This document shows positions 49,526 through 63,048 of a stretch of DNA of 64,000 nt, piece after piece (the first letter of the stretch is position 1; the number at the start of each line of letters is the position of its first letter). The stretch lies in the NCBI GenBank assembly GCA_004764695.1, contig SMSO01000014.1:2041648-2105647 (forward strand), read 5' to 3'. The DNA is from Schizochytrium sp. TIO01. Its lineage: Eukaryota; Protista; Bigyra: Labyrinthulomycetes. The position numbers were made by a program, and so were the translations under genes. Below the pieces are notes generated by a model. The model ran no database searches. It was not told where the DNA came from and saw only the letters and a list, made by a program, of their open reading frames with translations.

Positions 49526-52500
49526 TTACAAGGCAGCAGAGCTAGAGTCTGGCAACATGGCTAGGGCGCAGCCACGTGTGTGAAACCAGTGGTCATCATA
49601 GAACTTTGCAAGATTCTCAAGAGTCTCGCGGCTATTCTTTGCGAAATGAGCAGTATCAGCCATAGCGAAGACGTTTGCGTCGACCCATGCAGCAGAATCT
49701 CTTGAAGATGAAGGGTGAATGTCCGCCAAGCAGCGCTTCCATGCATCGAGAATCCAGAATAACCAGTAGGAGTTATTTGCAACAGCCTTGCGGTGCCACT
49801 CGGCCAGCTCGCTATGCACAAGGTCTGCGCCAGCAGAGTTTGGTGCTTCAGTTTCTGTAAGTCCTTCGAGCTCTTTGAACACCAACTCCACAACCTCGTC
49901 AGCCACATTGGAGTCACAGGTAAGGCTGACGAACGCAATTCCAAATGGGGAGAGTGAGTTACGTGAATGCTCCACAGCCACAGAGTAAATGAGCTGGCGC
50001 TCCATGCGCAGCACAGTCAAGAGGCGACGCTGAGCAACCTTGCAAGCACATTTAAGGGCTAGATCTTGGCGAACTTCATCCCGCAAATTATTAAAAGGAA
50101 CTTTAAACCCAAAGAGAATCTGTGCTTTGGCCTCCTCTTGGTGGCTCGAGTGGGATCCAACATGTTGAATCCTGTGCACAATACGATCAGTCGGGAATCC
50201 AAGCTTAACCGGGCGGGGAAGTCCAACCTTAGACCATCGCTTACTCGGAGTTCCTGTACGAGACAAAAGTCCACCGAGGTAATATTCCAGCATGGAATTG
50301 CAACGCTTTTCTCTAATCATGGAAAAATCACCGCAGAAAACAAAAGTGAATTCCTTTGCGGGGTCGCGTGTGAATGCATCAGCGAAAAGATCCTCTACCA
50401 TATGGATTTGAGCTGCTTCAAGTGCCTCGGCAGAGAGAGGACGGAGCAGCGGATCTTCATCGCCAAGCATCAACGCGCGGGTAGCCTCACTAAATTTGTA
50501 CTCGGGGCTTGTGCGAGCTGCTGAGGCATGTACACTTTGCAAGGCTAGTTCCTTATAGCGCTCAAATGAACGATCATCCAGAGCAGCCTGACGCGGCGAC
50601 AACCAAGCCACAATCATTTGTAGTAAAAGTTCAAGCTGCTCAGATGTGCATGATCCGCCTAAACCGCGGTGAAACCAATGATGCTGAAAACGGACGGAGC
50701 ATCGGTGCTCAGTCTCCACTTTGCGTAAGCTAAGTTCATCAAGAGAACCAACGCCACTGCTTTCTACAACGGAGCTCAACAACGAATATGCTGCGTCCTC
50801 TTCTTCAGAAATATCAGCAGAGCCACCAAGGGCAAAGGCTTGGAATGAGATGCGACCTGCATTAGCTTCAGGAAAACTCTTGAGACAAATTCGCAGTCCA
50901 TTACTAAGAACTACAGTTCTTGCTTTGGATAGAGGCATATCCACAACCTCAGCGGGCTGAAAAGAATCCACGTCAACGTCGGGATTCCACCTCTCTCCCA
51001 GAAGAGCACGTCCCAGGTCCTCTGCGCTCTCCAAAGGTGGCTTAAAGTTCCATGCTTGTAAGGTGTCATCATTCTGGGCGATTTCGATAGCGCGGTGGAC
51101 AAAGTCTGCAAGCTCAGATTCTGCAAGAAGCTCTCCAACCTGAGGTCCCTGTAGTACCATGACAGCGTAGTGACCTTCCACGGGTGCACCTTCGACCAAA
51201 GCTTTTAAGGTGCGACTAGCAAAAGTTTCCAAATCTTTGCATGTCATGCCCTGTGCGCTAAGCAAGTCAAGAGCAAAATTGGCCTCGTATGTAGGCCTCG
51301 GCTTAGGTGTGCGTTCGCGAAGAGCCATGTACTGTTCAAGTTCATCACTCAGTTGTGAGACAAGGGAGTCACTAGATTGCGGCTTGAGGCGCTCGAGAAA
51401 AACGCGAGCCCACTTGCGCTTGGCGAACTCGAGCTCCTCCACAGAAACACCAAATTTTAGGAGGCGTACAATCTCGCGCAAGAGCCGTGTGATCAGTGTG
51501 GTCAAAGCGCTGCGCCGAGCGCTGGTATCTTCAAGGTTAATATGGTGAATTTGCGCAGAGAGTGATGTACAAGTTGTTGGCGTGTCATGAAGCGCCATTC
51601 GGGTAGCCACGCCTGCGGTCTTCCATGGCCCGCTACTAGAATCGCTCTTCTTGTGCTCGGAGTCGGTAGGCTCGGCCTCGTGCTCCTCGGGTCGAGCACA
51701 TACCTCTCGGAGGCGAGCTTCGAGCACGCTCGTGAAGACTCGCTTGATGACTTCGTTGGAGAGGAAGAATTCCTCGTCAGCCATCTCTTCGTCCTTCATC
51801 TCTTCATACATTTCCGCTGTGAAGACAGTCTCGAGCAGCTCAGCATCGTCAAGGATCAGTGGCAAAGGACGACGCATTGGGAGTCGATGAGGTTCACGTA
51901 CGGCGAGGGGCAAGCTATCGTCGCGAGGTCCGAAAAGTCCTTTGGTCTCGATCTCTTGAAGAAGTCCGTCGGGACCTCCAAGCGCACCGAGGTTTCCGGC
52001 AACCACAAGGCCAAAGTTTTCCGGCCTATAATGCCGACGATAGAATTGGGCCAGCCCCTCTGCTGTGAGGCTTCGAATGGACTTTACAGTGCCAATCGGA
52101 ATGCGGGACCCCACACGGGGCATTGCACGCTCCCAATAATTCTGCTTAATGCGAGCTCCGGACCCTCTCTTCATGCGGTATTCCTCCAAGATTACCTTGC
52201 GCTCCGCCTCAACATCCGCTTCTGAAAAGCGAATGTGCCGAGCCCACTCGTCGAGCACATGCAGCGCGGATCGCAAAGTGTTGGCATCCTTGGCGGCAGT
52301 CTCGGGATCATTTTCTAAGCCTTCAGATACTGGAACATTTAAGATCCACACAGTCTCTGTGAGACCAGTACGAGCGTTGAGATCTGCTCCAAAGGATGAT
52401 CCAAGAGACGCAATGAACTCGTGGAGCTCCTCGTTTTCGAAGGACCTCGTGCCTCGAAATCCGCAGTGCTCCACGAAATGAGCGGCGCCAACCTCATCAT

Positions 52501-52639
52501 CAGTCTCGTCAAGAGAACCAACACGAACTACAAGCCTCAACAGTACGCTCTTTGCGCCGGGATCATCGACATAAGCGACGCTAGCACCGCCCGAGAGGGC
52601 CGCCGTCGCCATGGCTGACGCCGTCGGGTCCTGCTGCAT
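49526..52639 (-). CDS. M16B zinc metallopeptidase, PqqL-like
   Basis: LVVRVGSLDE....GAAHFVEHCGFRGT (inverted HxxEH zincin), FGADLNART...T, ERKVILEE, R.PIG, FYRRHYRPEN. The second half has LSNGLRI, FALGG and FTFVFCGDF. Confidence 0.9.
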   Translation of the reverse strand: MQQDPTASAMATAALSGGASVAYVDDPGAKSVLLRLVVRVGSLDETDDEVGAAHFVEHCGFRGTRSFENEELHEFIASLGSSFGADLNARTGLTETVWILNVPVSEGLENDPETAAKDANTLRSALHVLDEWARHIRFSEADVEAERKVILEEYRMKRGSGARIKQNYWERAMPRVGSRIPIGTVKSIRSLTAEGLAQFYRRHYRPENFGLVVAGNLGALGGPDGLLQEIETKGLFGPRDDSLPLAVREPHRLPMRRPLPLILDDAELLETVFTAEMYEEMKDEEMADEEFFLSNEVIKRVFTSVLEARLREVCARPEEHEAEPTDSEHKKSDSSSGPWKTAGVATRMALHDTPTTCTSLSAQIHHINLEDTSARRSALTTLITRLLREIVRLLKFGVSVEELEFAKRKWARVFLERLKPQSSDSLVSQLSDELEQYMALRERTPKPRPTYEANFALDLLSAQGMTCKDLETFASRTLKALVEGAPVEGHYAVMVLQGPQVGELLAESELADFVHRAIEIAQNDDTLQAWNFKPPLESAEDLGRALLGERWNPDVDVDSFQPAEVVDMPLSKARTVVLSNGLRICLKSFPEANAGRISFQAFALGGSADISEEEDAAYSLLSSVVESSGVGSLDELSLRKVETEHRCSVRFQHHWFHRGLGGSCTSEQLELLLQMIVAWLSPRQAALDDRSFERYKELALQSVHASAARTSPEYKFSEATRALMLGDEDPLLRPLSAEALEAAQIHMVEDLFADAFTRDPAKEFTFVFCGDFSMIREKRCNSMLEYYLGGLLSRTGTPSKRWSKVGLPRPVKLGFPTDRIVHRIQHVGSHSSHQEEAKAQILFGFKVPFNNLRDEVRQDLALKCACKVAQRRLLTVLRMERQLIYSVAVEHSRNSLSPFGIAFVSLTCDSNVADEVVELVFKELEGLTETEAPNSAGADLVHSELAEWHRKAVANNSYWLFWILDAWKRCLADIHPSSSRDSAAWVDANVFAMADTAHFAKNSRETLENLAKFYDDHWFHTRGCALAMLPDSSSAAL

Positions 52640-57617: not shown

Positions 57618-58276
57618 TTCGTTCGATTGATCGATTGACTGATTTAGACTAACTTCGATTCGTTTGTTGCGGCAATTCGAAGACCGCATTGACTGCAGTA
57701 GACAAGCAAGGGCTCTCTTGATGATCAAGCACGTTTCCACACCTACTTTGAAGAATCCATCGCGTGTATCGATTGATGGGCTCTTCGCAAGCAAGCAAGC
57801 TAGAAGTACCCTATCCTCTACATTAGTAGTCGGGAAAGAAATGAAATGCTGATTGAATGAACGAATAAATGAATGAGTGTCGCAGGTACCGCCTATGCAT
57901 TTTTATATGTAAAGAAATACCCGCAGAAACGTGGACCACGAGTCAGTGAGCCGTTCTCTTGGAGGCCTTTGCTAATCTTGTCGATGAGCTATGCATAGAG
58001 TCTTGCGAAACCAAATCGTCTAGCGGGATAGATCGTGCGTGCTTTCTATTGCTTACTAATTTGTCAATTGTCCAGGTCTATGCATGCATGCATGCATGCA
58101 TTCATTCATTCATTCATTTATTCATTTATTCATTTCTTTCGACCATTTCTTTCTTACTTGGTTTCTCTCTTTTCTTCAAGGCAATTCAATTTTGTCTTCT
58201 TTTTATGATTTAAAAAATAATAAGAAATTAAAGTAATTAAAGTTTCTCTCTCTCATGATGATGTTTTGGGATAGCT

Positions 58277-58423
58277 ATGGTAATTACAATTCACGAGAAG
58301 AAACATCAGAACCACGTGCGGTCGCAGCACGAGCTCCTCATCGCACGCACGCAAGAGGCCCACGCCGCGACCGCCGCCGCCAAGGAGCTGATACGTGCGA
58401 GGAAGAAACCTTGGGGACGCTGA
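58277..58423 (+). other. Candidate upstream ORF or microprotein, 48 aa
   Basis: ATG GTA ATT...GGA CGC TGA = MVITIHEKKHQNHVRSQHELLIARTQEAHAATAAAKELIRARKKPWGR. GC3-rich codons in AT-rich surroundings, ending about 280 bp upstream of the 58703 gene. Confidence 0.35.
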
Positions 58424-58702
58424 GATCCCTCTGAGCAGCCTCCAAAGCTCTTTGTGACCGGATCGGGCAACAGCAGCAGCAGCAGCAGCATTGGCGTATA
58501 ACTCATTGTTGCTACGAACGAAAGTAAGGACAGACAAACGATCGAACCTCCTTAGGCATCCAACTTTTTATAGCGAGACGAGCTTACGCCGGCTGAGCGC
58601 ACATAGTTTTGGGACGTGGAGTTAACACGACTTTTGCAATCCTCTCAAGAAGATTACGAGCATAGAACTTGATTGCTTGTCTTAATCAAAATAAACTTGA
58701 AA

Positions 58703-61009
58703 ATGCAGGTACAATACGTCACCCCATTTAAGGATAAGTACCAGCGCAATAATAAGCAGACTGGACGCAAGAACTTGCGATGCTTTCCCCTATGCCACGC
58801 ATCACGACACATTGCCTCTGGATTTTGTGGGCAGCAAGTGAAGATAATTGTGCGGAATTGCGAGGTGGAACCCTCACGCCTTAGGGTGTGGGCGCAATTT
58901 GAGGGTGCTACTGATCCTCCTGTAGTGCAAATCGGGGACTTGTACAAAGAATCAGATGCTGTCAAGCAAGAACGATCGCGACAATACCCGGTGCTTCCAT
59001 GGATGCGTGGTAATGTTTATCAAGGCGAAGTTGAATTTGATGAACATGGCTTCGAACAGGCTGGCTCAAAGCGGCTGAACCTTTATTCGGGTAGCGTCAC
59101 GATTGTTGTCAACTCTGAACGCATGGGTTGGCACTACCAATGGGCAAGTAACAAGCACACCTGTAATAATTTTCATGTGATGCGCACATACCTGTACGAA
59201 ACATTGGATGATGGAGAAACAATGCGAAATGTCGGCGCATTCGACTCGCCCTCATTTCAGATTTTCTGTCGTCGTCGTCAACGCAAACCTACTGCTAATC
59301 TCCAACCTATGGCTCCTGCAACGACGCCACCCAATGCTCGTGCCCCCGCGGTAGAATTACAACAACAACAACAAAATGATCAAGACGAGCTCCACATAGA
59401 CTCCTCAAGCGGTTGCGCCCCAGCATCCTCGTCCTCCTCCTCTTCTTTCTCACCTCTATCGCCTGCAACAACAACAACAACAACAACTCCCGGAGTCACA
59501 AGTCCATTAACGTCGTATATACCTACAAACCTAAGCCCGCAACCATCTCTATCGTCGATAGACCTAGAAAGGCCAACGTACATGGATGGCCGCAAGCGTA
59601 AGACATCCACAGGGCCACAATCGCCATCTAGCGCTTCCATATCCTCTCCAGATGCAGCAGCCTTTGAGTCCATGGATAACGATGACCTCATCGAATTCCG
59701 TGCGAAGATGCGACGTCGGCTCTCTGTCATCTCAGATCCTTCCACTGGTCAACCTGTTCTTCCGCAAAGCGCATTTCTAAAGCTAATGGAGATTAGTTGC
59801 TTCCGTGGTAAACCTGATCAAATCGAAGAAGAGGAAGGCACTAAGATTCGTGATGGCGGCGTCCTTGTCGGCACCTCTGACTCTGCCATCGAGGATTTTT
59901 CCTCTAACCTACTTGGTGGTATTGTCTGTGGTTTTGACATGAACACCCTCATGGATGAAAATGACATATATGGTGAGGGTTCAAACTATGGCGGTCTTCT
60001 CGACGGAGAATTTGCAGCATTTACGGAAGCACAACCTACACCACCAAAGTCAACTTATCTGGCTGTGCGAAGCGTAGCGGCTGATCTTGCTGGATATTTG
60101 CAAGAAGAAGAGTCCTTTACACAAGCCATCAGTGACTTCTTCCAGGGCAATGCCCTTATTGATATGACAGAGGATAACATATCTGGCCTTTTTCGGCAGT
60201 TTGTTGCTGTTGTGCAAATGCACGTTGAAGGTTATCTTTGCTCACGTGGAATCTCCATGGAAAACTTTTTGAGGGATCTTGAAAAGGAATCTAGTATTGT
60301 TCATCAAGCAGGAGTTTTCACACCCAAAGAAAGTGAGGCAGAACCTACACAACGCTACGCAGCCTTTAAGTTGAATTTTTTGCGCCGTCTCCGCAGTGAG
60401 ACACGACCGTCGTCCTTCCCGCCGAACCAACAGCCAGCAACACCTGATTTTGATGTGAGTGGAAGCTGGGTCAATACAGGTCAAGATGAGGATGACAGCC
60501 AAACCGTGCACAAAATTCTTCAAGCCCACGGTTACCCTGTCTTTATCTTTCAAACTGTGCGCAGTATGCTTTCCCGCTTCCGAGTAACTATGTCCCGCGA
60601 TTGGGTTCTTATCCAAGGTGTGAAGAAACTCATGAGCAATGCTGAGTTTCTTTTCCAATTTGACGGTAGGGACCACTCCTTCGAAATCCCCTATGTTGTT
60701 CCACTAGGCATGCCCTCCATTCCATGCATGTACCGCTGCTCCAAATTTATTCGCGAAGGCCATCGCATCTTGCAGTGTGTCGTGCATGGTGACTTTCCTC
60801 GCTCCGAGGGAGGCCGCTTCGAAATTGTTCGTGAGATTTTTGTACTTTCCAACAAAGAAATGCTCCAGTCTCATGTATCCTTTGATATTGTCCGCGAAGA
60901 TGGCTTCCGCGAGACAATCGCAGAAATTTCCCAGCGATTTATCCGCGTCTGCGGTCAAGACGAATACCATGAACTCCTTGACATCGCTGATGATCTTCTC
61001 GCCATGTAA
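58703..61009 (+). CDS. Uncharacterised protein; putative transcription factor with a Cys/His N-terminal domain and a FABP/calycin-like C-terminal domain
   Basis: 768-codon ORF from ATG 58703. N-terminal NLRCFPLC....H.....FCG, basic RRRQRK and RKRK, Q/S/T/P-rich linker, C-terminal DVSGSW...EIVREI...QRFIRV. Confidence refers to the gene being real; the function is inferred. Confidence 0.85.
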   Translation: MQVQYVTPFKDKYQRNNKQTGRKNLRCFPLCHASRHIASGFCGQQVKIIVRNCEVEPSRLRVWAQFEGATDPPVVQIGDLYKESDAVKQERSRQYPVLPWMRGNVYQGEVEFDEHGFEQAGSKRLNLYSGSVTIVVNSERMGWHYQWASNKHTCNNFHVMRTYLYETLDDGETMRNVGAFDSPSFQIFCRRRQRKPTANLQPMAPATTPPNARAPAVELQQQQQNDQDELHIDSSSGCAPASSSSSSSFSPLSPATTTTTTTPGVTSPLTSYIPTNLSPQPSLSSIDLERPTYMDGRKRKTSTGPQSPSSASISSPDAAAFESMDNDDLIEFRAKMRRRLSVISDPSTGQPVLPQSAFLKLMEISCFRGKPDQIEEEEGTKIRDGGVLVGTSDSAIEDFSSNLLGGIVCGFDMNTLMDENDIYGEGSNYGGLLDGEFAAFTEAQPTPPKSTYLAVRSVAADLAGYLQEEESFTQAISDFFQGNALIDMTEDNISGLFRQFVAVVQMHVEGYLCSRGISMENFLRDLEKESSIVHQAGVFTPKESEAEPTQRYAAFKLNFLRRLRSETRPSSFPPNQQPATPDFDVSGSWVNTGQDEDDSQTVHKILQAHGYPVFIFQTVRSMLSRFRVTMSRDWVLIQGVKKLMSNAEFLFQFDGRDHSFEIPYVVPLGMPSIPCMYRCSKFIREGHRILQCVVHGDFPRSEGGRFEIVREIFVLSNKEMLQSHVSFDIVREDGFRETIAEISQRFIRVCGQDEYHELLDIADDLLAM

Positions 61010-62202
61010 CCAATATCCCTTTGATGAATGAATTGAAATATTCCCGCTTCTACTACTAATAATTACGAATAGATTTACTGCCATGACCCATTTTGCCCTT
61101 GATCTACCAACTCTAACCATATCCTTTTCATTTCAATTTTCTTTGTATGCTATTCCTCTTCTTCGGATCACTTCTACCTTCAAATATTTGCCTCTATTTT
61201 CCCACTAAACGATATTTTTATAGAAGCAATCTTCATCATAGGTTTACGTATGATTGTTGGCATGGGCTAAGTTTCACATGATACATTTGTACCTCCGTCT
61301 TTAGGGTCTGAGGTACTTGGCCATTCCCCCACAGATTCTCTCTGATCCTTTGCCACAACACGATACCTGAGAAAATCCAAGGCAGAATGTATATAGCGAG
61401 TTCCTGGTCACTCTCTCATGAAATAATTCAACTACTTGCAAGCAACTCAATCTCCCCTTGAAACAGATAACCCTCCATCCCCATAAATCTGAAAATGGCC
61501 CATACTTCAAGTCGGAATGTGTAAATTGACCTGCTGCTGTACATAATGAAACTAGTTAACACGCGCCTCAGCTGTCATCCGTTGAAACAAAGAGTGCACC
61601 GATAATGGAGTACATGGGGAATCTCTCAGACGCGCAACGGAAGAAATCCATCAACCAGAAACGTTGCTGTAGGGATTCCAAAACCAGAACCATGAAGTTC
61701 AACATAAAGCTGCCTGAGAATAGCCAAATTCAAGATGATTCTTTCGGGCGTTTCGAAGACGACATTGAACATACCAAGAATAAGAATCATTCATTTATAA
61801 GTGAGAAACCGGACGGTACGGAGAAACAGTTCGGGAAAACATTAGAGGTTATGTTTTGCCGATACGTTAGTTTATTTCGTGAAACAGCGCACCAACAGCA
61901 GCAATCAAGAAACTCGCGGTAGCGAAAGCTTCGGAAGGTTCCTGTTTGCCTCGTATCGAGCATACTCTACCTGTTTGGGCGAGCTTCTCACCAAAATCGT
62001 GAATATACTCACGGTTTTCGGTGACACCTACGAAGTTTTAGATTAATCTTAGAGTTTCGTTCGTGAATAACTGCTCCTTCGTTTTGTGGAGCCCAAAGAC
62101 TCTGAGCAAATCGCAACGACAACAACTTAGTTTATTAACTACAACCTGCGCACTCGTCGTGAAGATCTTGTCTTAGGAAACTTCAACAGAAGCTAGACAG
62201 GA

Positions 62203-63048
62203 ATGCCTCTCCCTCAGGGTCAGCTGCTTGGCAGCGAAGAAGTTCAACAGAATGTTTCCACACGCTTCGAGCAAGCTTGTATGGAGCTTAAGGCAAAGGG
62301 CGAGCGCCAGCGTGCCGAAAAAGCCCTTAAGGATGAGGAAGAACGCCGCGAGCAGGCTCGTGAGGAGGCTTCTCGCCCCTTGAAGGAGCGTCTTGCCTTT
62401 ATGAAGGACTCAGATGACGTGATGACTGCTGCCATGTACAAGCAGCAGCAAAACCAGGATGAGGAAGACCGCGATGCTGTTCTTGATGACGATGCTGAGC
62501 TTGACGCTCTTCGTCAAGCACGATTGGACAAGATGAAGAAATCAAAAGCACAGATGCAGGAGAACCTTTCTAAGGGTCACGGTCAGTATGAAGAGGTCTT
62601 TGAGGAGGATTTCCTGAAGACTGTCCTCGCTAGCAAATTTTGTGTCGCGCACTTTTATCACAATGACTTTGAGCGTTGCAAGCTCATGGACAAGCACTTG
62701 AAGCTCATGGCTGTCAACCATGTGGAGGCCCGCTTTTTCAAGATTGATGCTGAAAAGGCACTGTTCTTTGTGGAGAAACTCAACATCCGTACTTTGCCTA
62801 CATTGATCTTTTTCCAGGATGGCAAGGCTATTGACCGCCTCATGGGTTTCCAAGACCTTCCCAATGGCGATGACTTCACAACTCGTGATCTTGAAGAGCG
62901 TATCGGCATCACTGGTGCTATTAAGATGGAGCGTGCCTTTTATGAAGAGCGTTCTGATGTGGGTGCCGTCAAGAAGCCTGTCAAATCAACAATTACCAGG
63001 GGATTTACACAACGTACTGAGGATTTTGAGGACCCTTTCGATGACTAA
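62203..63048 (+). CDS. TXNDC9: Phosducin-like thioredoxin-domain protein (PhLP3/TXNDC9)
   Basis: ELDALRQARL..MKK, KGHGQYEEV, VAHFYHNDFERCKLMDKHL, FFKIDAEKA.FFVEKLNIRTLPT, DRLMGFQDL. Confidence 0.92.
   Translation: MPLPQGQLLGSEEVQQNVSTRFEQACMELKAKGERQRAEKALKDEEERREQAREEASRPLKERLAFMKDSDDVMTAAMYKQQQNQDEEDRDAVLDDDAELDALRQARLDKMKKSKAQMQENLSKGHGQYEEVFEEDFLKTVLASKFCVAHFYHNDFERCKLMDKHLKLMAVNHVEARFFKIDAEKALFFVEKLNIRTLPTLIFFQDGKAIDRLMGFQDLPNGDDFTTRDLEERIGITGAIKMERAFYEERSDVGAVKKPVKSTITRGFTQRTEDFEDPFDD

What the first reader, a model, noticed from the sequence alone, without database searches (positions are those of the whole stretch)
58703..61009. Candidate lipid-sensing transcription factor: unassigned Cys/His domain fused to a FABP-like beta-barrel
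Seen: (1) an N-terminal domain of about 195 aa with YQRNNKQTGRKNLRCFPLCHASRHIASGFCG (C-x3-C-x4-H-x5-C, a plausible Zn site), alternating beta-strand patterns, GWHYQWASNKH, and the ending SPSFQIFCRRRQRK; (2) a Gln/Ser/Thr/Pro-rich linker with RKRK and an acidic-hydrophobic stretch; (3) a helical segment; (4) a C-terminal domain that tracks the FABP order of elements: FDVSGSW (GxW on strand A), two helices VHKILQAHGYPVFIFQTVRSM (compare FDDYMKSLGVGFATRQV), strands RFRVTM/WVLIQ/AEFLFQFDG, EIVREI (compare TLVREL) and ISQRFIRV (compare CTRTYEK). Known: Ig-fold DNA-binding domains of the p53/Ndt80/Rel group end in a similar S-x-P-hydrophobic strand followed by basic residues, and FABP barrels bind fatty acids. 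Inference: a single-chain ligand-regulated transcription factor analogous to nuclear receptors but built from unrelated parts, attractive in a presumed oleaginous protist. I know of no named family with this architecture.
Basis: partly seen in the sequence, partly recalled or inferred. Interest (0 to 1): 0.88.

Follow-up and report, generated by a model that had tools for sequence, protein, structure and literature searches.

The report
Rel-like DNA-binding domain fused to FABP barrel
This thraustochytrid gene joins a predicted NF-kB/velvet-like, zinc-holding DNA-binding domain to a predicted fatty-acid-binding-protein barrel. It belongs to a large unnamed stramenopile family, so it is a good but unproven candidate for a gene regulator that senses a small lipid-like molecule directly.

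Summary

**N-terminal domain (aa 1-195).** It models confidently (pLDDT 86) as an Ig-type beta-sandwich. Its best structural matches are NF-kB p52 (Z 7.2), the velvet protein VosA (Z 7.0), TonEBP, RBPJ, T-box, Runt and STAT. These Z values are middling, but the top ranks are almost all transcription factors. The domain is basic (pI 9.3). In 155 family members C27, H36, C42 and H158 are invariant, and position 31 is Cys in 145 and His in 10.

**C-terminal domain (aa 579-751).** It models (pLDDT 86) as beta-alpha-alpha-beta9. The top 11 structural matches are all FABP-fold proteins (LBP-8, Z 11.7), clearly separated from other calycins (Z 7.6 or less). A family profile also touches FABP5 by sequence (E 0.047).

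**Family.** No Pfam model in the local copy covers any part of the protein. The N-domain family has at least 1355 clusters, in oomycetes and labyrinthulomycetes. This genome has 19 such genes. Eight of them carry the barrel, and no stand-alone barrel was found.

**Not shown.** DNA binding, ligand binding and ligand identity are all inferred.

The scan reached the same reading earlier on a paralogue pair in this genome (s1-825071).

Verdict: the folds are supported and the function is untested. This is a new variant of a known kind.

The parts
58300..58702 (+). 5' untranslated region (approximate; contigs start at 58300, 58357 and 58414)
   Evidence: Contig pieces, table 8. No coverage upstream of about 58300 in three of the four runs.
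58703..61009 (+). Intronless coding sequence, 768 codons plus stop
   Evidence: ORF. MMETSP transcript ORF 99% identical. Colinear contigs without joints.
58703..59287 (+). N-terminal basic Ig-fold domain (aa 1-195), the putative DNA-binding domain, Rel/velvet-like
   Evidence: Model pLDDT 86, pTM 0.83. VIA matches: NF-kB p52 Z 7.2 with 137 residues aligned, VosA Z 7.0, TonEBP 6.6, RBPJ 6.2, TBX5 and RUNX1 5.6. pI 9.28, and 8.7-9.9 in 16 paralogues. 1355 homologous clusters.
58739..58831 (+). Signature loop YQRNNKxxGxKNLRCFPxC...H...GFCG with candidate Zn ligands C27, C31, H36, C42
   Evidence: In 155 domains: C27, H36 and C42 155/155; position 31 is Cys in 145 and His in 10; R15 150, K23 152, R26 155, P29 155. 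Zinc binding itself is inferred.
59126..59176 (+). Second conserved block GWHYxW..NKHTC...H (W143, Y145, H158 invariant or nearly so)
   Evidence: W143 153/155, Y145 155/155, H158 155/155.
59246..59287 (+). Last strand SPxFxIF followed by the basic run CRRRQRK (NLS-like)
   Evidence: S182 145/155, F185 139/155, R191 126/155 with Lys in 20 more. The nuclear-localisation role is inferred.
59288..59692 (+). Low-complexity acidic linker rich in Q/S/T/P, with GRKRK (59588-59602) and DNDDLIEF (59675-59698)
   Evidence: pI 4.26. Only 30% identical to the Hondaea orthologue, against 79-87% in the domains.
59693..60379 (+). Middle module (aa 331-559), presumably helical. Its core (about aa 392-545, 59876-60337) is shared by many family members.
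   Evidence: Local jackhmmer finds it in about 45 of 159 fetched family proteins and in 4 own-genome paralogues. Weak, below-cut-off ARL2_Bind_BART matches. It was not folded here.
60437..60955 (+). C-terminal FABP-type beta-barrel (aa 579-751): strand A, helix-turn-helix, nine more strands
   Evidence: Model pLDDT 86, pTM 0.80. Foldseek: 53 PDB hits at E<=1e-3; all 50 listed are CRABP, myelin P2 or CRBP. VIA: LBP-8 Z 11.7 (135 aligned, 3.1 A), the top 11 all FABP fold, the next group at Z 7.6 or less. Family profile against PDB sequences: FABP5 E 0.047.
60962..61003 (+). C-terminal amphipathic helix after the barrel (aa 754-767)
   Evidence: Model helix at residues 195-208. Conserved in the orthologues.

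Best explanation
The gene encodes a member of a large, so far unnamed stramenopile family of probable transcription factors.

**Shown by models and comparisons.** There is a basic N-terminal Ig-type beta-sandwich whose nearest solved relatives are the DNA-binding domains of NF-kB/Rel, fungal velvet proteins, CSL, T-box, Runt and STAT. It carries an essentially invariant Cys-Cys/His-His-Cys cluster next to an invariant, Arg/Lys-rich N-terminal loop. An acidic low-complexity linker with two basic NLS-like runs follows, then a conserved middle module. The protein ends in an FABP-type (iLBP) ten-stranded barrel with a helix-turn-helix cap.

**Inferred.**
- The N-domain binds DNA through its N-terminal loop, as the Rel L1 loop and the velvet loop do. 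The Cys/His cluster holds a structural zinc that shapes that loop.
- The barrel binds a small hydrophobic molecule. A fatty acid or another lipid is the leading candidate but is not established.
- Occupancy of the barrel changes the factor's activity, by localisation, partner binding or DNA binding.
- The eight barrel-bearing paralogues, whose barrels diverge most in the second half, would then sense different ligands.
For: - **Real, expressed, intronless gene**.
- **N-domain fold.** pLDDT 86. Eight of the nine highest-scoring entries among 48,161 chains are Rel, velvet or CSL DNA-binding domains, aligning 107-137 residues, while generic Ig domains align 82-104. Foldseek's weak hits are also p53, velvet and STAT.
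- **Charge.** The N-domain has pI 8.7-9.9 in all 16 paralogues and the rest of the protein is acidic.
- **Conserved residues.** R15, K23, R26, C27, C/H31, H36, C42, Y145 and H158 are invariant or nearly invariant in 155 domains.
- **Family expansion with variable tails, as is typical of transcription factors.** 19 genes in this genome and 1355 clusters overall.
- **Barrel.** pLDDT 86 with FABP topology. All 50 listed Foldseek hits are iLBPs, of 53 at E<=1e-3, each with probability 1.00. VIA gives Z 8.8-11.7 for 11 FABP-fold chains, against 7.6 or less for other calycins. The family profile touches FABP5 and FABP4 by sequence over strand A, both helices and strand B (E 0.047 and 0.7). The G-x-W of strand A is kept in 98% and 89% of members.
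- **Conservation.** The barrel is the best-conserved part between orthologues: 87% identity, against 79% for the N-domain and 30% for the linker.
- **Linkage.** All 8 barrels in this genome sit in genes of this family, and none stands alone.
Against: - No experiment or tool here shows DNA binding, zinc binding, ligand binding or nuclear localisation.
- The N-domain Z values (7.2 at best) lie in the range the tool calls common, and Foldseek E-values are all above 1e-3.
- Neither domain matches any Pfam model, and Pfam Lipocalin (PF00061) and Lipocalin_7 (PF14651) find nothing in the whole genome.
- The conserved positions of the barrel lie mostly in its first half. No Arg/Arg/Tyr carboxylate triad is conserved family-wide.
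- The homodimer test gave no answer.
- FABP folds can also carry non-lipid ligands or none, as UnaG, nanoKAZ and SAHS show.
Confidence: 0.5

Rival explanations
1. It is a transcription factor of this new Rel/velvet-like family, but the FABP-fold barrel is not a small-molecule sensor. It would serve instead as a protein-protein, dimerisation or scaffold domain, as the IPT/TIG domain does behind the Rel N-domain, or as ligand-free FABP-fold proteins such as SAHS do.
For: - The family-wide conserved barrel residues cluster in strand A, the two helices and the strand D-E turn, not in a recognisable ligand triad.
- 11 of the 19 paralogues do without the barrel.
- Oomycete members show the N-domain only.
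- FABP-fold matches include proteins without lipid ligands.
Against: - The helix-turn-helix portal and ten-strand barrel are kept intact, and the barrel is the most conserved part between orthologues at 87%.
- Divergence concentrated in the second half of the barrel among paralogues is what ligand diversification would give.
- Most solved FABP-fold proteins enclose a ligand (established knowledge).
Confidence: 0.27
2. It is not a DNA-binding transcription factor. The N-terminal Ig-type Zn domain would bind protein, RNA or a membrane component, and the protein would be a cytosolic lipid-handling or signalling scaffold that uses the FABP barrel to carry a lipid.
For: - Ig-type sandwiches are common, and Z of about 7 is within the range the tool calls unspecific.
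- There is no sequence match to any known DNA-binding family.
- The middle module has weak, below-cut-off resemblance to the Arl2-binding BART domain.
Against: - The top structural ranks are almost exclusively transcription-factor DNA-binding domains and have the longest alignments.
- The N-domain is uniformly basic next to acidic, low-complexity, Q/S/T/P-rich regions and two basic NLS-like runs.
- The family is large and paralogous, with one constant domain and variable tails.
Confidence: 0.15
3. The ORF is not a real gene, or the fusion is an assembly or annotation artefact that joins two genes.
For: None found.
Against: - A single uninterrupted ORF.
- The same full-length protein in an independent transcriptome and in Hondaea.
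- Single contigs from separate studies span both domains.
- The same architecture in 8 paralogues and in Mucochytrium and Aplanochytrium.
Confidence: 0.01

Closest known systems
Rel homology domain, N-terminal part (NF-kB p52/p65/c-Rel, NFAT5/TonEBP), and the fungal velvet domain (VosA, VelB, VeA)
   Same: An s-type Ig beta-sandwich of about 180-200 residues. These are the best structural matches (Z 7.2, 7.0, 6.6, 6.3; 123-137 residues aligned). A conserved basic loop sits near the N-terminus, and a basic run follows directly after the last strand, where Rel proteins carry their NLS (established knowledge).
   Different: No detectable sequence similarity. The signature is different: YQRNNKxxGxKNLRCFPxC instead of RxxRYxCEG. 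There is an invariant Cys/His cluster that Rel and velvet domains lack, and no IPT/TIG domain behind. Dimerisation is not shown.
Intracellular lipid-binding proteins (FABP, CRABP, CRBP, C. elegans LBP-8)
   Same: The same topology: strand A, helix-turn-helix, then nine strands. Z 8.8-11.7 with nearly whole-chain alignments and Foldseek probability 1.00. The G-x-W in strand A is kept, and there is marginal profile similarity to FABP5 and FABP4. From established knowledge, CRABP2, FABP4/5 and LBP-8 carry ligands to nuclear receptors, so a link from barrel to transcription has precedent in trans.
   Different: Here the barrel is a domain of a 768-aa protein, fused in cis to a putative DNA-binding domain. 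It is longer, with a 14-residue loop between strands E and F and an extra C-terminal helix. It is below every Pfam threshold. The Arg/Arg/Tyr triad is not conserved family-wide. It occurs in a stramenopile, whereas to my knowledge iLBPs are described as an animal family.
THAP4 (THAP zinc-finger DNA-binding domain plus C-terminal nitrobindin haem-binding barrel)
   Same: A DNA-binding domain at the N-terminus and a ten-stranded calycin barrel at the C-terminus of one chain. The nitrobindin domain of THAP4 appears among the weaker matches (3ia8, Z 7.3).
   Different: The DNA-binding fold is different: a THAP zinc finger rather than an Ig sandwich. The barrel here is clearly nearer to FABPs than to nitrobindin (Z 11.7 against 7.3) and has the helix-turn-helix cap that, to my knowledge, nitrobindin lacks.
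Nuclear receptors
   Same: Only the proposed logic: one chain with a DNA-binding domain, a hydrophobic-ligand pocket, and a paralogous family with diverging pockets.
   Different: Both domains have unrelated folds: no C4 zinc-finger DNA-binding domain and no helical-sandwich ligand-binding domain. There are no Pfam hits. Ligand regulation is unproven here.
Pfam 38.1 PF28397 (DG1062_N)
   Same: The protein atlas puts the N-domain at cosine 0.89, sharing 182 of 256 features, next to a cluster in which half the members carry this family.
   Different: The family is not in the local Pfam copy, so membership could not be tested. Nothing on its function turned up in the paper library.

Membership tests
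iLBP / FABP family (calycin superfamily) | Ten-stranded antiparallel beta-barrel with a helix-turn-helix between strands A and B | tested here: met
   The model has E28-32, H37-49 and H54-63, then nine strands. The top 11 VIA matches are all FABP fold, Z 8.8-11.7. All 50 listed Foldseek hits are iLBPs, of 53 at E<=1e-3.
iLBP / FABP family (calycin superfamily) | Sequence match to Pfam PF00061 (Lipocalin / cytosolic FABP) or PF14651 (Lipocalin_7) above the cut-off | tested here: not met
   No hit at E<=10 for 8 paralogous barrels. None in 48 family members. None in the whole genome.
iLBP / FABP family (calycin superfamily) | Detectable sequence homology to solved FABPs | tested here: inconclusive
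   The 48-member profile gives FABP5 E 0.047 and FABP4 E 0.69-0.79 over strand A to strand B. The 8-member profile and a single paralogue give nothing. G-x-W is conserved at 98% and 89%.
iLBP / FABP family (calycin superfamily) | Carboxylate-binding Arg/Arg/Tyr (or equivalent) inside the barrel, and an internal cavity | tested here: inconclusive
   The window protein has Arg in the eighth strand (EIVREI) and the tenth strand (SQRFIRV), but these are not conserved family-wide. No coordinates were available to check side-chain orientation or the cavity.
iLBP / FABP family (calycin superfamily) | Binds a fatty acid or other hydrophobic ligand | not testable with these tools
   Needs binding assays or a structure.
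Rel / velvet / p53-like Ig-fold DNA-binding domains | s-type Ig beta-sandwich whose closest structural relatives are these DNA-binding domains | tested here: met
   NF-kB p52 Z 7.2 (137 aligned), VosA 7.0, RelA/c-Rel 7.0, TonEBP 6.6, VeA 6.3, RBPJ 6.2, TBX5 5.6, RUNX1 5.6, STAT 5.3, Ndt80 4.7. The Z values are middling, so this holds at fold level only.
Rel / velvet / p53-like Ig-fold DNA-binding domains | Sequence match to RHD_DNA_bind, Velvet, P53, NDT80_PhoG, T-box, Runt or LAG1 models, or to solved members | tested here: not met
   No such Pfam hit at E<=10 or in 48 members at E<=0.1. The N-domain profile against PDB sequences gives only two chance-level hits.
Rel / velvet / p53-like Ig-fold DNA-binding domains | Sequence-specific DNA binding, usually as a dimer | not testable with these tools
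   The homodimer prediction gave 'no answer'. DNA binding needs an experiment.
Structural zinc site (Cys/His) | Four conserved Cys/His ligands in a compact stretch | tested here: met
   C27, H36 and C42 are 155/155. Position 31 is Cys in 145 and His in 10. H158 is also 155/155. Geometry and metal content were not testable here.
Nuclear receptor superfamily | C4 zinc-finger DNA-binding domain and helical ligand-binding domain | tested here: not met
   No Pfam match. Both domains model as beta folds.
Pfam 38.1 PF28397 DG1062_N | Match to the family model above its cut-off | not testable with these tools
   The atlas gives a lead only. The accession is absent from the local library.

The most novel reading that the evidence does not exclude
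Labyrinthulomycetes may possess a nuclear-receptor-like system of their own, built from unrelated parts. It would be a paralogous set of one-chain transcription factors, eight of them in this genome. In each, an FABP-type barrel binds a distinct lipid or other hydrophobic metabolite and directly controls a Rel/velvet-like zinc-containing DNA-binding domain. If so, these would be iLBP-type domains outside animals, used in cis as transcriptional sensors. They would give direct handles on how DHA-producing thraustochytrids regulate lipid metabolism.
Probability: 0.3. Interest if true: 0.9.

Novelty: new variant of a known kind. Interest (0 to 1): 0.72.

Why it matters
- **A missing transcription-factor family.** If the N-domain binds DNA, a family of at least 1355 sequence clusters in oomycetes (which include major crop pathogens) and labyrinthulomycetes is absent from current transcription-factor catalogues. 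Those catalogues are built on Pfam domains.
- **A direct lipid sensor.** If the barrel is a ligand sensor, this would be a direct link between a lipid-type ligand and transcription in one polypeptide, outside the nuclear-receptor family. It would sit in organisms grown industrially for DHA and squalene, whose lipid regulation is poorly understood.
- **Origin of the FABP fold.** It would also bear on where the FABP/iLBP fold arose, since to my knowledge it is usually treated as an animal invention.
- **Testability.** All of this can be tested with standard methods in Aurantiochytrium, which can be transformed.

Tried and rejected
**Searches that found nothing**
- Pfam scans found nothing above cut-off for the whole protein, for 48 family members and for 8 paralogous barrels. 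There were only weak ARL2_Bind_BART matches in the middle module.
- PDB sequence searches were blank with the whole protein, the N-domain profile, the 8-member barrel profile and a single paralogous barrel.
- Pfam Lipocalin (PF00061) and Lipocalin_7 (PF14651) find nothing in the genome. The Lipocalin_7 control rang nowhere, so that blank is weak.
- Word-indexed homologue searches returned only orthologues and a few others. The exhaustive profile search was needed to see the family.

**Tests without an answer**
- The N-domain homodimer prediction returned 'no answer', with score 0.00 and my alignment not used. It is no evidence either way.

**Tools and leads that failed**
- The first try of the look-up of sequencing runs failed and the second worked.
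- Model coordinates are not exposed. Zn-site geometry, barrel cavity and residue-level superposition on FABP or Rel could not be done.
- PF28397 is not in the local library, and the 'DG1062' paper hits were all unrelated (instruments or reagents).
- From memory, I tried to read the Dictyostelium CudA paper on a 'new family of transcription factors' as a possible relative. It is not held, so the lead is untested.
- Literature searches for a described family were blank.

**Readings I considered and dropped**
- A WRKY/GCM-type zinc domain, because the model is a roughly 190-residue Ig sandwich.
- An intron at ATGCAG|GT at the start codon, because transcript and orthologues begin at the same Met.

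Full report
**1. The gene is real.**
- Window 58673-61009 (+) is one open frame. The first ATG is at 58703 and gives 768 aa.
- A transcriptome ORF of 766 aa from MMETSP, flagged complete, is 99% identical over its whole length. Hondaea fermentalgiana has a 766-aa orthologue that starts at the same Met.
- The organism is therefore a thraustochytrid close to Aurantiochytrium and Hondaea. The assembly has 64 Mb in 37 contigs.
- Contigs of four public runs from four studies were laid on 57900-61900. In three of them coverage starts at 58300-58508, ends at 61047-61123, and is absent on both flanks. No run shows a joint.
- The tool only guesses that these runs are RNA, but the picture is that of an unspliced mRNA with a 5' UTR of about 300-400 nt.
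- The neighbours are ordinary: an M16 peptidase at 49526-52639 (-) and a thioredoxin-domain protein at 62203-63048 (+).

**2.
- Pfam gives nothing above cut-off, and the PDB sequence search is blank.

**3. The N-terminal domain (aa 1-195).**
- *Family size in this genome.* A six-frame search of the organism's own genome found 23 matches in about 18 further genes. After fetching the complete ORFs I count 19 genes with the domain.
- *Model.* An alignment of 16 paralogous domains (A2) gave an AlphaFold model with mean pLDDT 86 and pTM 0.83. It is almost all beta.
- *Foldseek.* Only weak hits against the PDB (best E 4e-3), but they are p53, VosA-VelB and STAT.
- *Foldseek-independent scan of 48,161 chains.* The ranking was:
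  - NF-kB p52: Z 7.2, 137 aligned, rmsd 4.2
  - VosA: Z 7.0
  - RelA/c-Rel: Z 7.0
  - p65: Z 6.8
  - TonEBP: Z 6.6
  - VeA: Z 6.3
  - RBPJ: Z 6.2
  - a further NF-kB entry (2o61): Z 6.2
  - then, after a phage tail protein at Z 6.0: NF-kB1 (5.7), TBX5, RUNX1, STAT, Ndt80 and MYRF
- *How far to trust this.* The tool warns that Z below 8 is common. What counts here is that the top ranks are almost only transcription-factor Ig folds, and that they align more residues (107-137) than generic Ig domains do (82-104).
- *Charge.* The domain is basic in all 16 paralogues (pI 8.7-9.9), whereas the linker, middle and C-terminal parts are acidic (pI 4.3-5.3).
- *Conserved residues.* In 155 domains taken from the best hits of the profile search, R26, C27, P29, H36, C42, Y145 and H158 are invariant. 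Position 31 is Cys in 145 and His in 10. R15 and K23 are conserved in 150 and 152.
It is embedded in an invariant basic loop at the position where Rel and velvet proteins carry their DNA-contacting loop. That equivalence is my inference from the fold match, not a residue-level superposition.
- *End of the domain.* It ends in S-P-x-F-x-I-F followed by CRRRQRK.

**4. Family breadth.**
- The A2 profile, scored against 1.84 billion representatives, found 1355 proteins at E<=1e-3, 916 at 1e-10 and 268 at 1e-30.
- The named members are all 'hypothetical'. They come from oomycetes (Thraustotheca, Pythium, Phytophthora) and labyrinthulomycetes (Hondaea, Mucochytrium, Aplanochytrium, MMETSP thraustochytrids).
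- A Pfam scan of 48 full-length members returned no family for any of the three conserved modules.
- Paper searches for such a family in oomycetes, stramenopiles or Aurantiochytrium were blank.
- The protein atlas gives one lead. After two unnamed oomycete clusters (0.92, 0.90), it lists a cluster in which half the members carry Pfam 38.1 PF28397 'DG1062_N' (0.89, 182 of 256 shared features), and further down LAG1-DNAbind (0.79).
- PF28397 is not in the local Pfam copy. The domain may therefore already have a recent Pfam entry, but I could not test it or find anything on its function.

**5. The C-terminal domain.**
- *Occurrence in the family.* A local jackhmmer over the 159 fetched family proteins showed that about 75 also carry a homologue of the last 200 residues and about 45 carry the middle module. 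The three-part architecture is therefore family-wide, not a one-off.
- *Occurrence in this genome.* Eight of the 19 genes have the C-terminal domain. A profile of those eight finds exactly those eight and no stand-alone copy.
- *Model.* With a 48-row alignment (A5) the model has pLDDT 86 and pTM 0.80. The order of elements is strand, helix, helix, nine strands, then a terminal helix.
- *Foldseek.* 53 PDB hits at E<=1e-3. All 50 listed are CRABP2, myelin P2/FABP8 or CRBP, each with probability 1.00 and target-normalised TM 0.52-0.66.
- *Wide scan.* The ranking was:
  - C. elegans LBP-8: Z 11.7, 135 of 138 residues, 3.1 A
  - SAHS: Z 11.0
  - CRBP4: Z 10.9
  - UnaG: Z 10.8
  - nanoKAZ: Z 10.6
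  - several FABPs and a bile-acid-binding protein: Z 9.5-10.5
  - a helix-less FABP variant: Z 8.8
  - then a step down to other calycins, Z 7.6 or less (BFA1, DUF3598, nitrobindin/THAP4, bilin lyases)
- *Sequence level.* The 48-row profile's only matches to beta-rich domains in the whole PDB are FABP5 (E 0.047) and FABP4 (E 0.7). They align over strand A, both helices and strand B: the family consensus GtW...se..leelre.lgvpwvlrkm against GKW...S.GFEEYMKELGVGLALRKM. That is suggestive of homology but not proof.
- *Negative results.* Single sequences and the shallow profile find nothing. The Pfam Lipocalin and Lipocalin_7 models find nothing in the protein or the genome.
- *Atlas.* The embedding search had independently listed FABP/Lipocalin_7, nanoluciferase and DUF3598 clusters, all below 0.9.
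- *Conserved positions.* G587 (98%), W589 (89%), the helix II block G-x-P-W-x-L-R-K-M, K-L-L-S, the L-D-G turn, P-x-P, and Y-x-A-W. The second half of the barrel is variable, and some paralogues carry insertions there.
They are not conserved across the family, and I could not check whether they point inward.

**6. Selection.** Against the Hondaea orthologue the barrel is 87% identical, the N-domain 79%, the middle module 70% and the linker 30%. Both end domains are under strong constraint, the barrel most of all.

**7. Mechanism.**

What is shown:
- an expressed gene
- two confidently modelled domains with the stated nearest folds
- an invariant Cys/His cluster and basic loop
- a basic N-domain next to an acidic remainder
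- strict linkage of the barrel to this family in this genome

What is inferred:
- The N-domain binds DNA, and the Cys/His cluster holds zinc.
- The basic runs (aa 190-195 and 296-300) act as nuclear-localisation signals.
- The barrel holds a hydrophobic ligand whose presence changes the factor's activity.

From established knowledge there is precedent for a barrel-to-transcription link in trans: CRABP2, FABP4/5 and LBP-8 deliver ligands to nuclear receptors. There is also precedent for a DNA-binding domain fused to a calycin barrel in THAP4. The fatty-acid identity of the ligand is the weakest step.

My odds:
- folds as stated: about 0.9
- transcription factor: about 0.7
- barrel is a small-molecule sensor, given a transcription factor: about 0.6
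- fatty acid specifically: about 0.25

**8. Tests that gave nothing.** Coordinates of the models are not exposed.

**9. Earlier notes of this scan.**
- A follow-up on a neighbouring paralogue pair in the same genome (s1-825071) reached the same reading, a 'Rel-like DNA-binding domain fused to FABP barrel'.
- Several first-reader notes describe further paralogues.
- I found these after my own fold searches. They agree with my results but are not independent evidence.
- One note (s1-824521) speaks of an iLBP-type domain in this genome. My searches with Pfam Lipocalin models found no canonical copy.

**10. Verdict.** The parts are known folds. What is new is the combination, the family of the DNA-binding domain, and the occurrence of an FABP-type barrel in a stramenopile. 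I class it as a new variant of a known kind, with interest 0.72.

Noticed in passing
G000 contig C36, 1335766-1362097 (loci L030, L034, L038): Three family paralogues lie within 27 kb: two convergent neighbours and a third 18 kb further on, all with the FABP-like barrel. In the middle one (minus strand) the N-domain sits in a 266-aa ORF and the barrel in a separate 677-aa ORF on the same strand, so there is an intron, a frameshift or an assembly error between them.
   Followed up: partly
G000 contig C13, 2239872-2240411 (L014/L041), about 135 kb downstream of the window: Another paralogue on the same contig has a low-complexity S/T-rich insertion of about 130 residues inside the N-domain, between the HxxxxY strand and the final SPxF strand. 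The loop there evidently tolerates large inserts.
   Followed up: no
P0005 (Thraustotheca clavata, 1471 aa) and P0139 (Pythium oligandrum, 1155 aa): Oomycete members show three matched stretches of the N-domain profile in one protein, possibly tandem domains. No FABP-like barrel was detected in them, although P0139 has weak matches to the middle module.
   Followed up: partly
P0011 (NCBI CAK8998408.1, 1869 aa): This family member has the N-domain, middle module and barrel but is annotated as 'X-ray repair cross-complementing protein 5 (Ku80)'. It is probably a fused gene model or a transferred name.
   Followed up: no
window 59876-60337 (aa 392-545): The conserved middle module gives weak, below-cut-off matches to Pfam ARL2_Bind_BART (E 0.053 here; best 7.7e-5 among 3 of 48 members).
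   Followed up: partly
window 58357-61900 and beyond, run X1: One 6560-nt contig starts at 58357 like the others but runs on past the 3' end of the gene through 61900, with depth 384. This could be read-through into the next gene, DNA in the run, or an assembly join.
   Followed up: no
window 58385-59978: Ten single-base differences between the window and contigs of other strains or studies lie within the 5' UTR and coding region, several of them shared by three runs (58507 T>C, 59399 G>A, 59566 A>G, 59758 T>C). This indicates strain-level polymorphism. Their coding effect was not examined.
   Followed up: no
window 49526-52639 (-) and 62203-63048 (+): The neighbouring genes are an M16 (insulinase-type) peptidase and a 281-aa thioredoxin-domain protein with an acidic, coiled N-terminal half. 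Neither has an evident functional link to the finding.
   Followed up: partly
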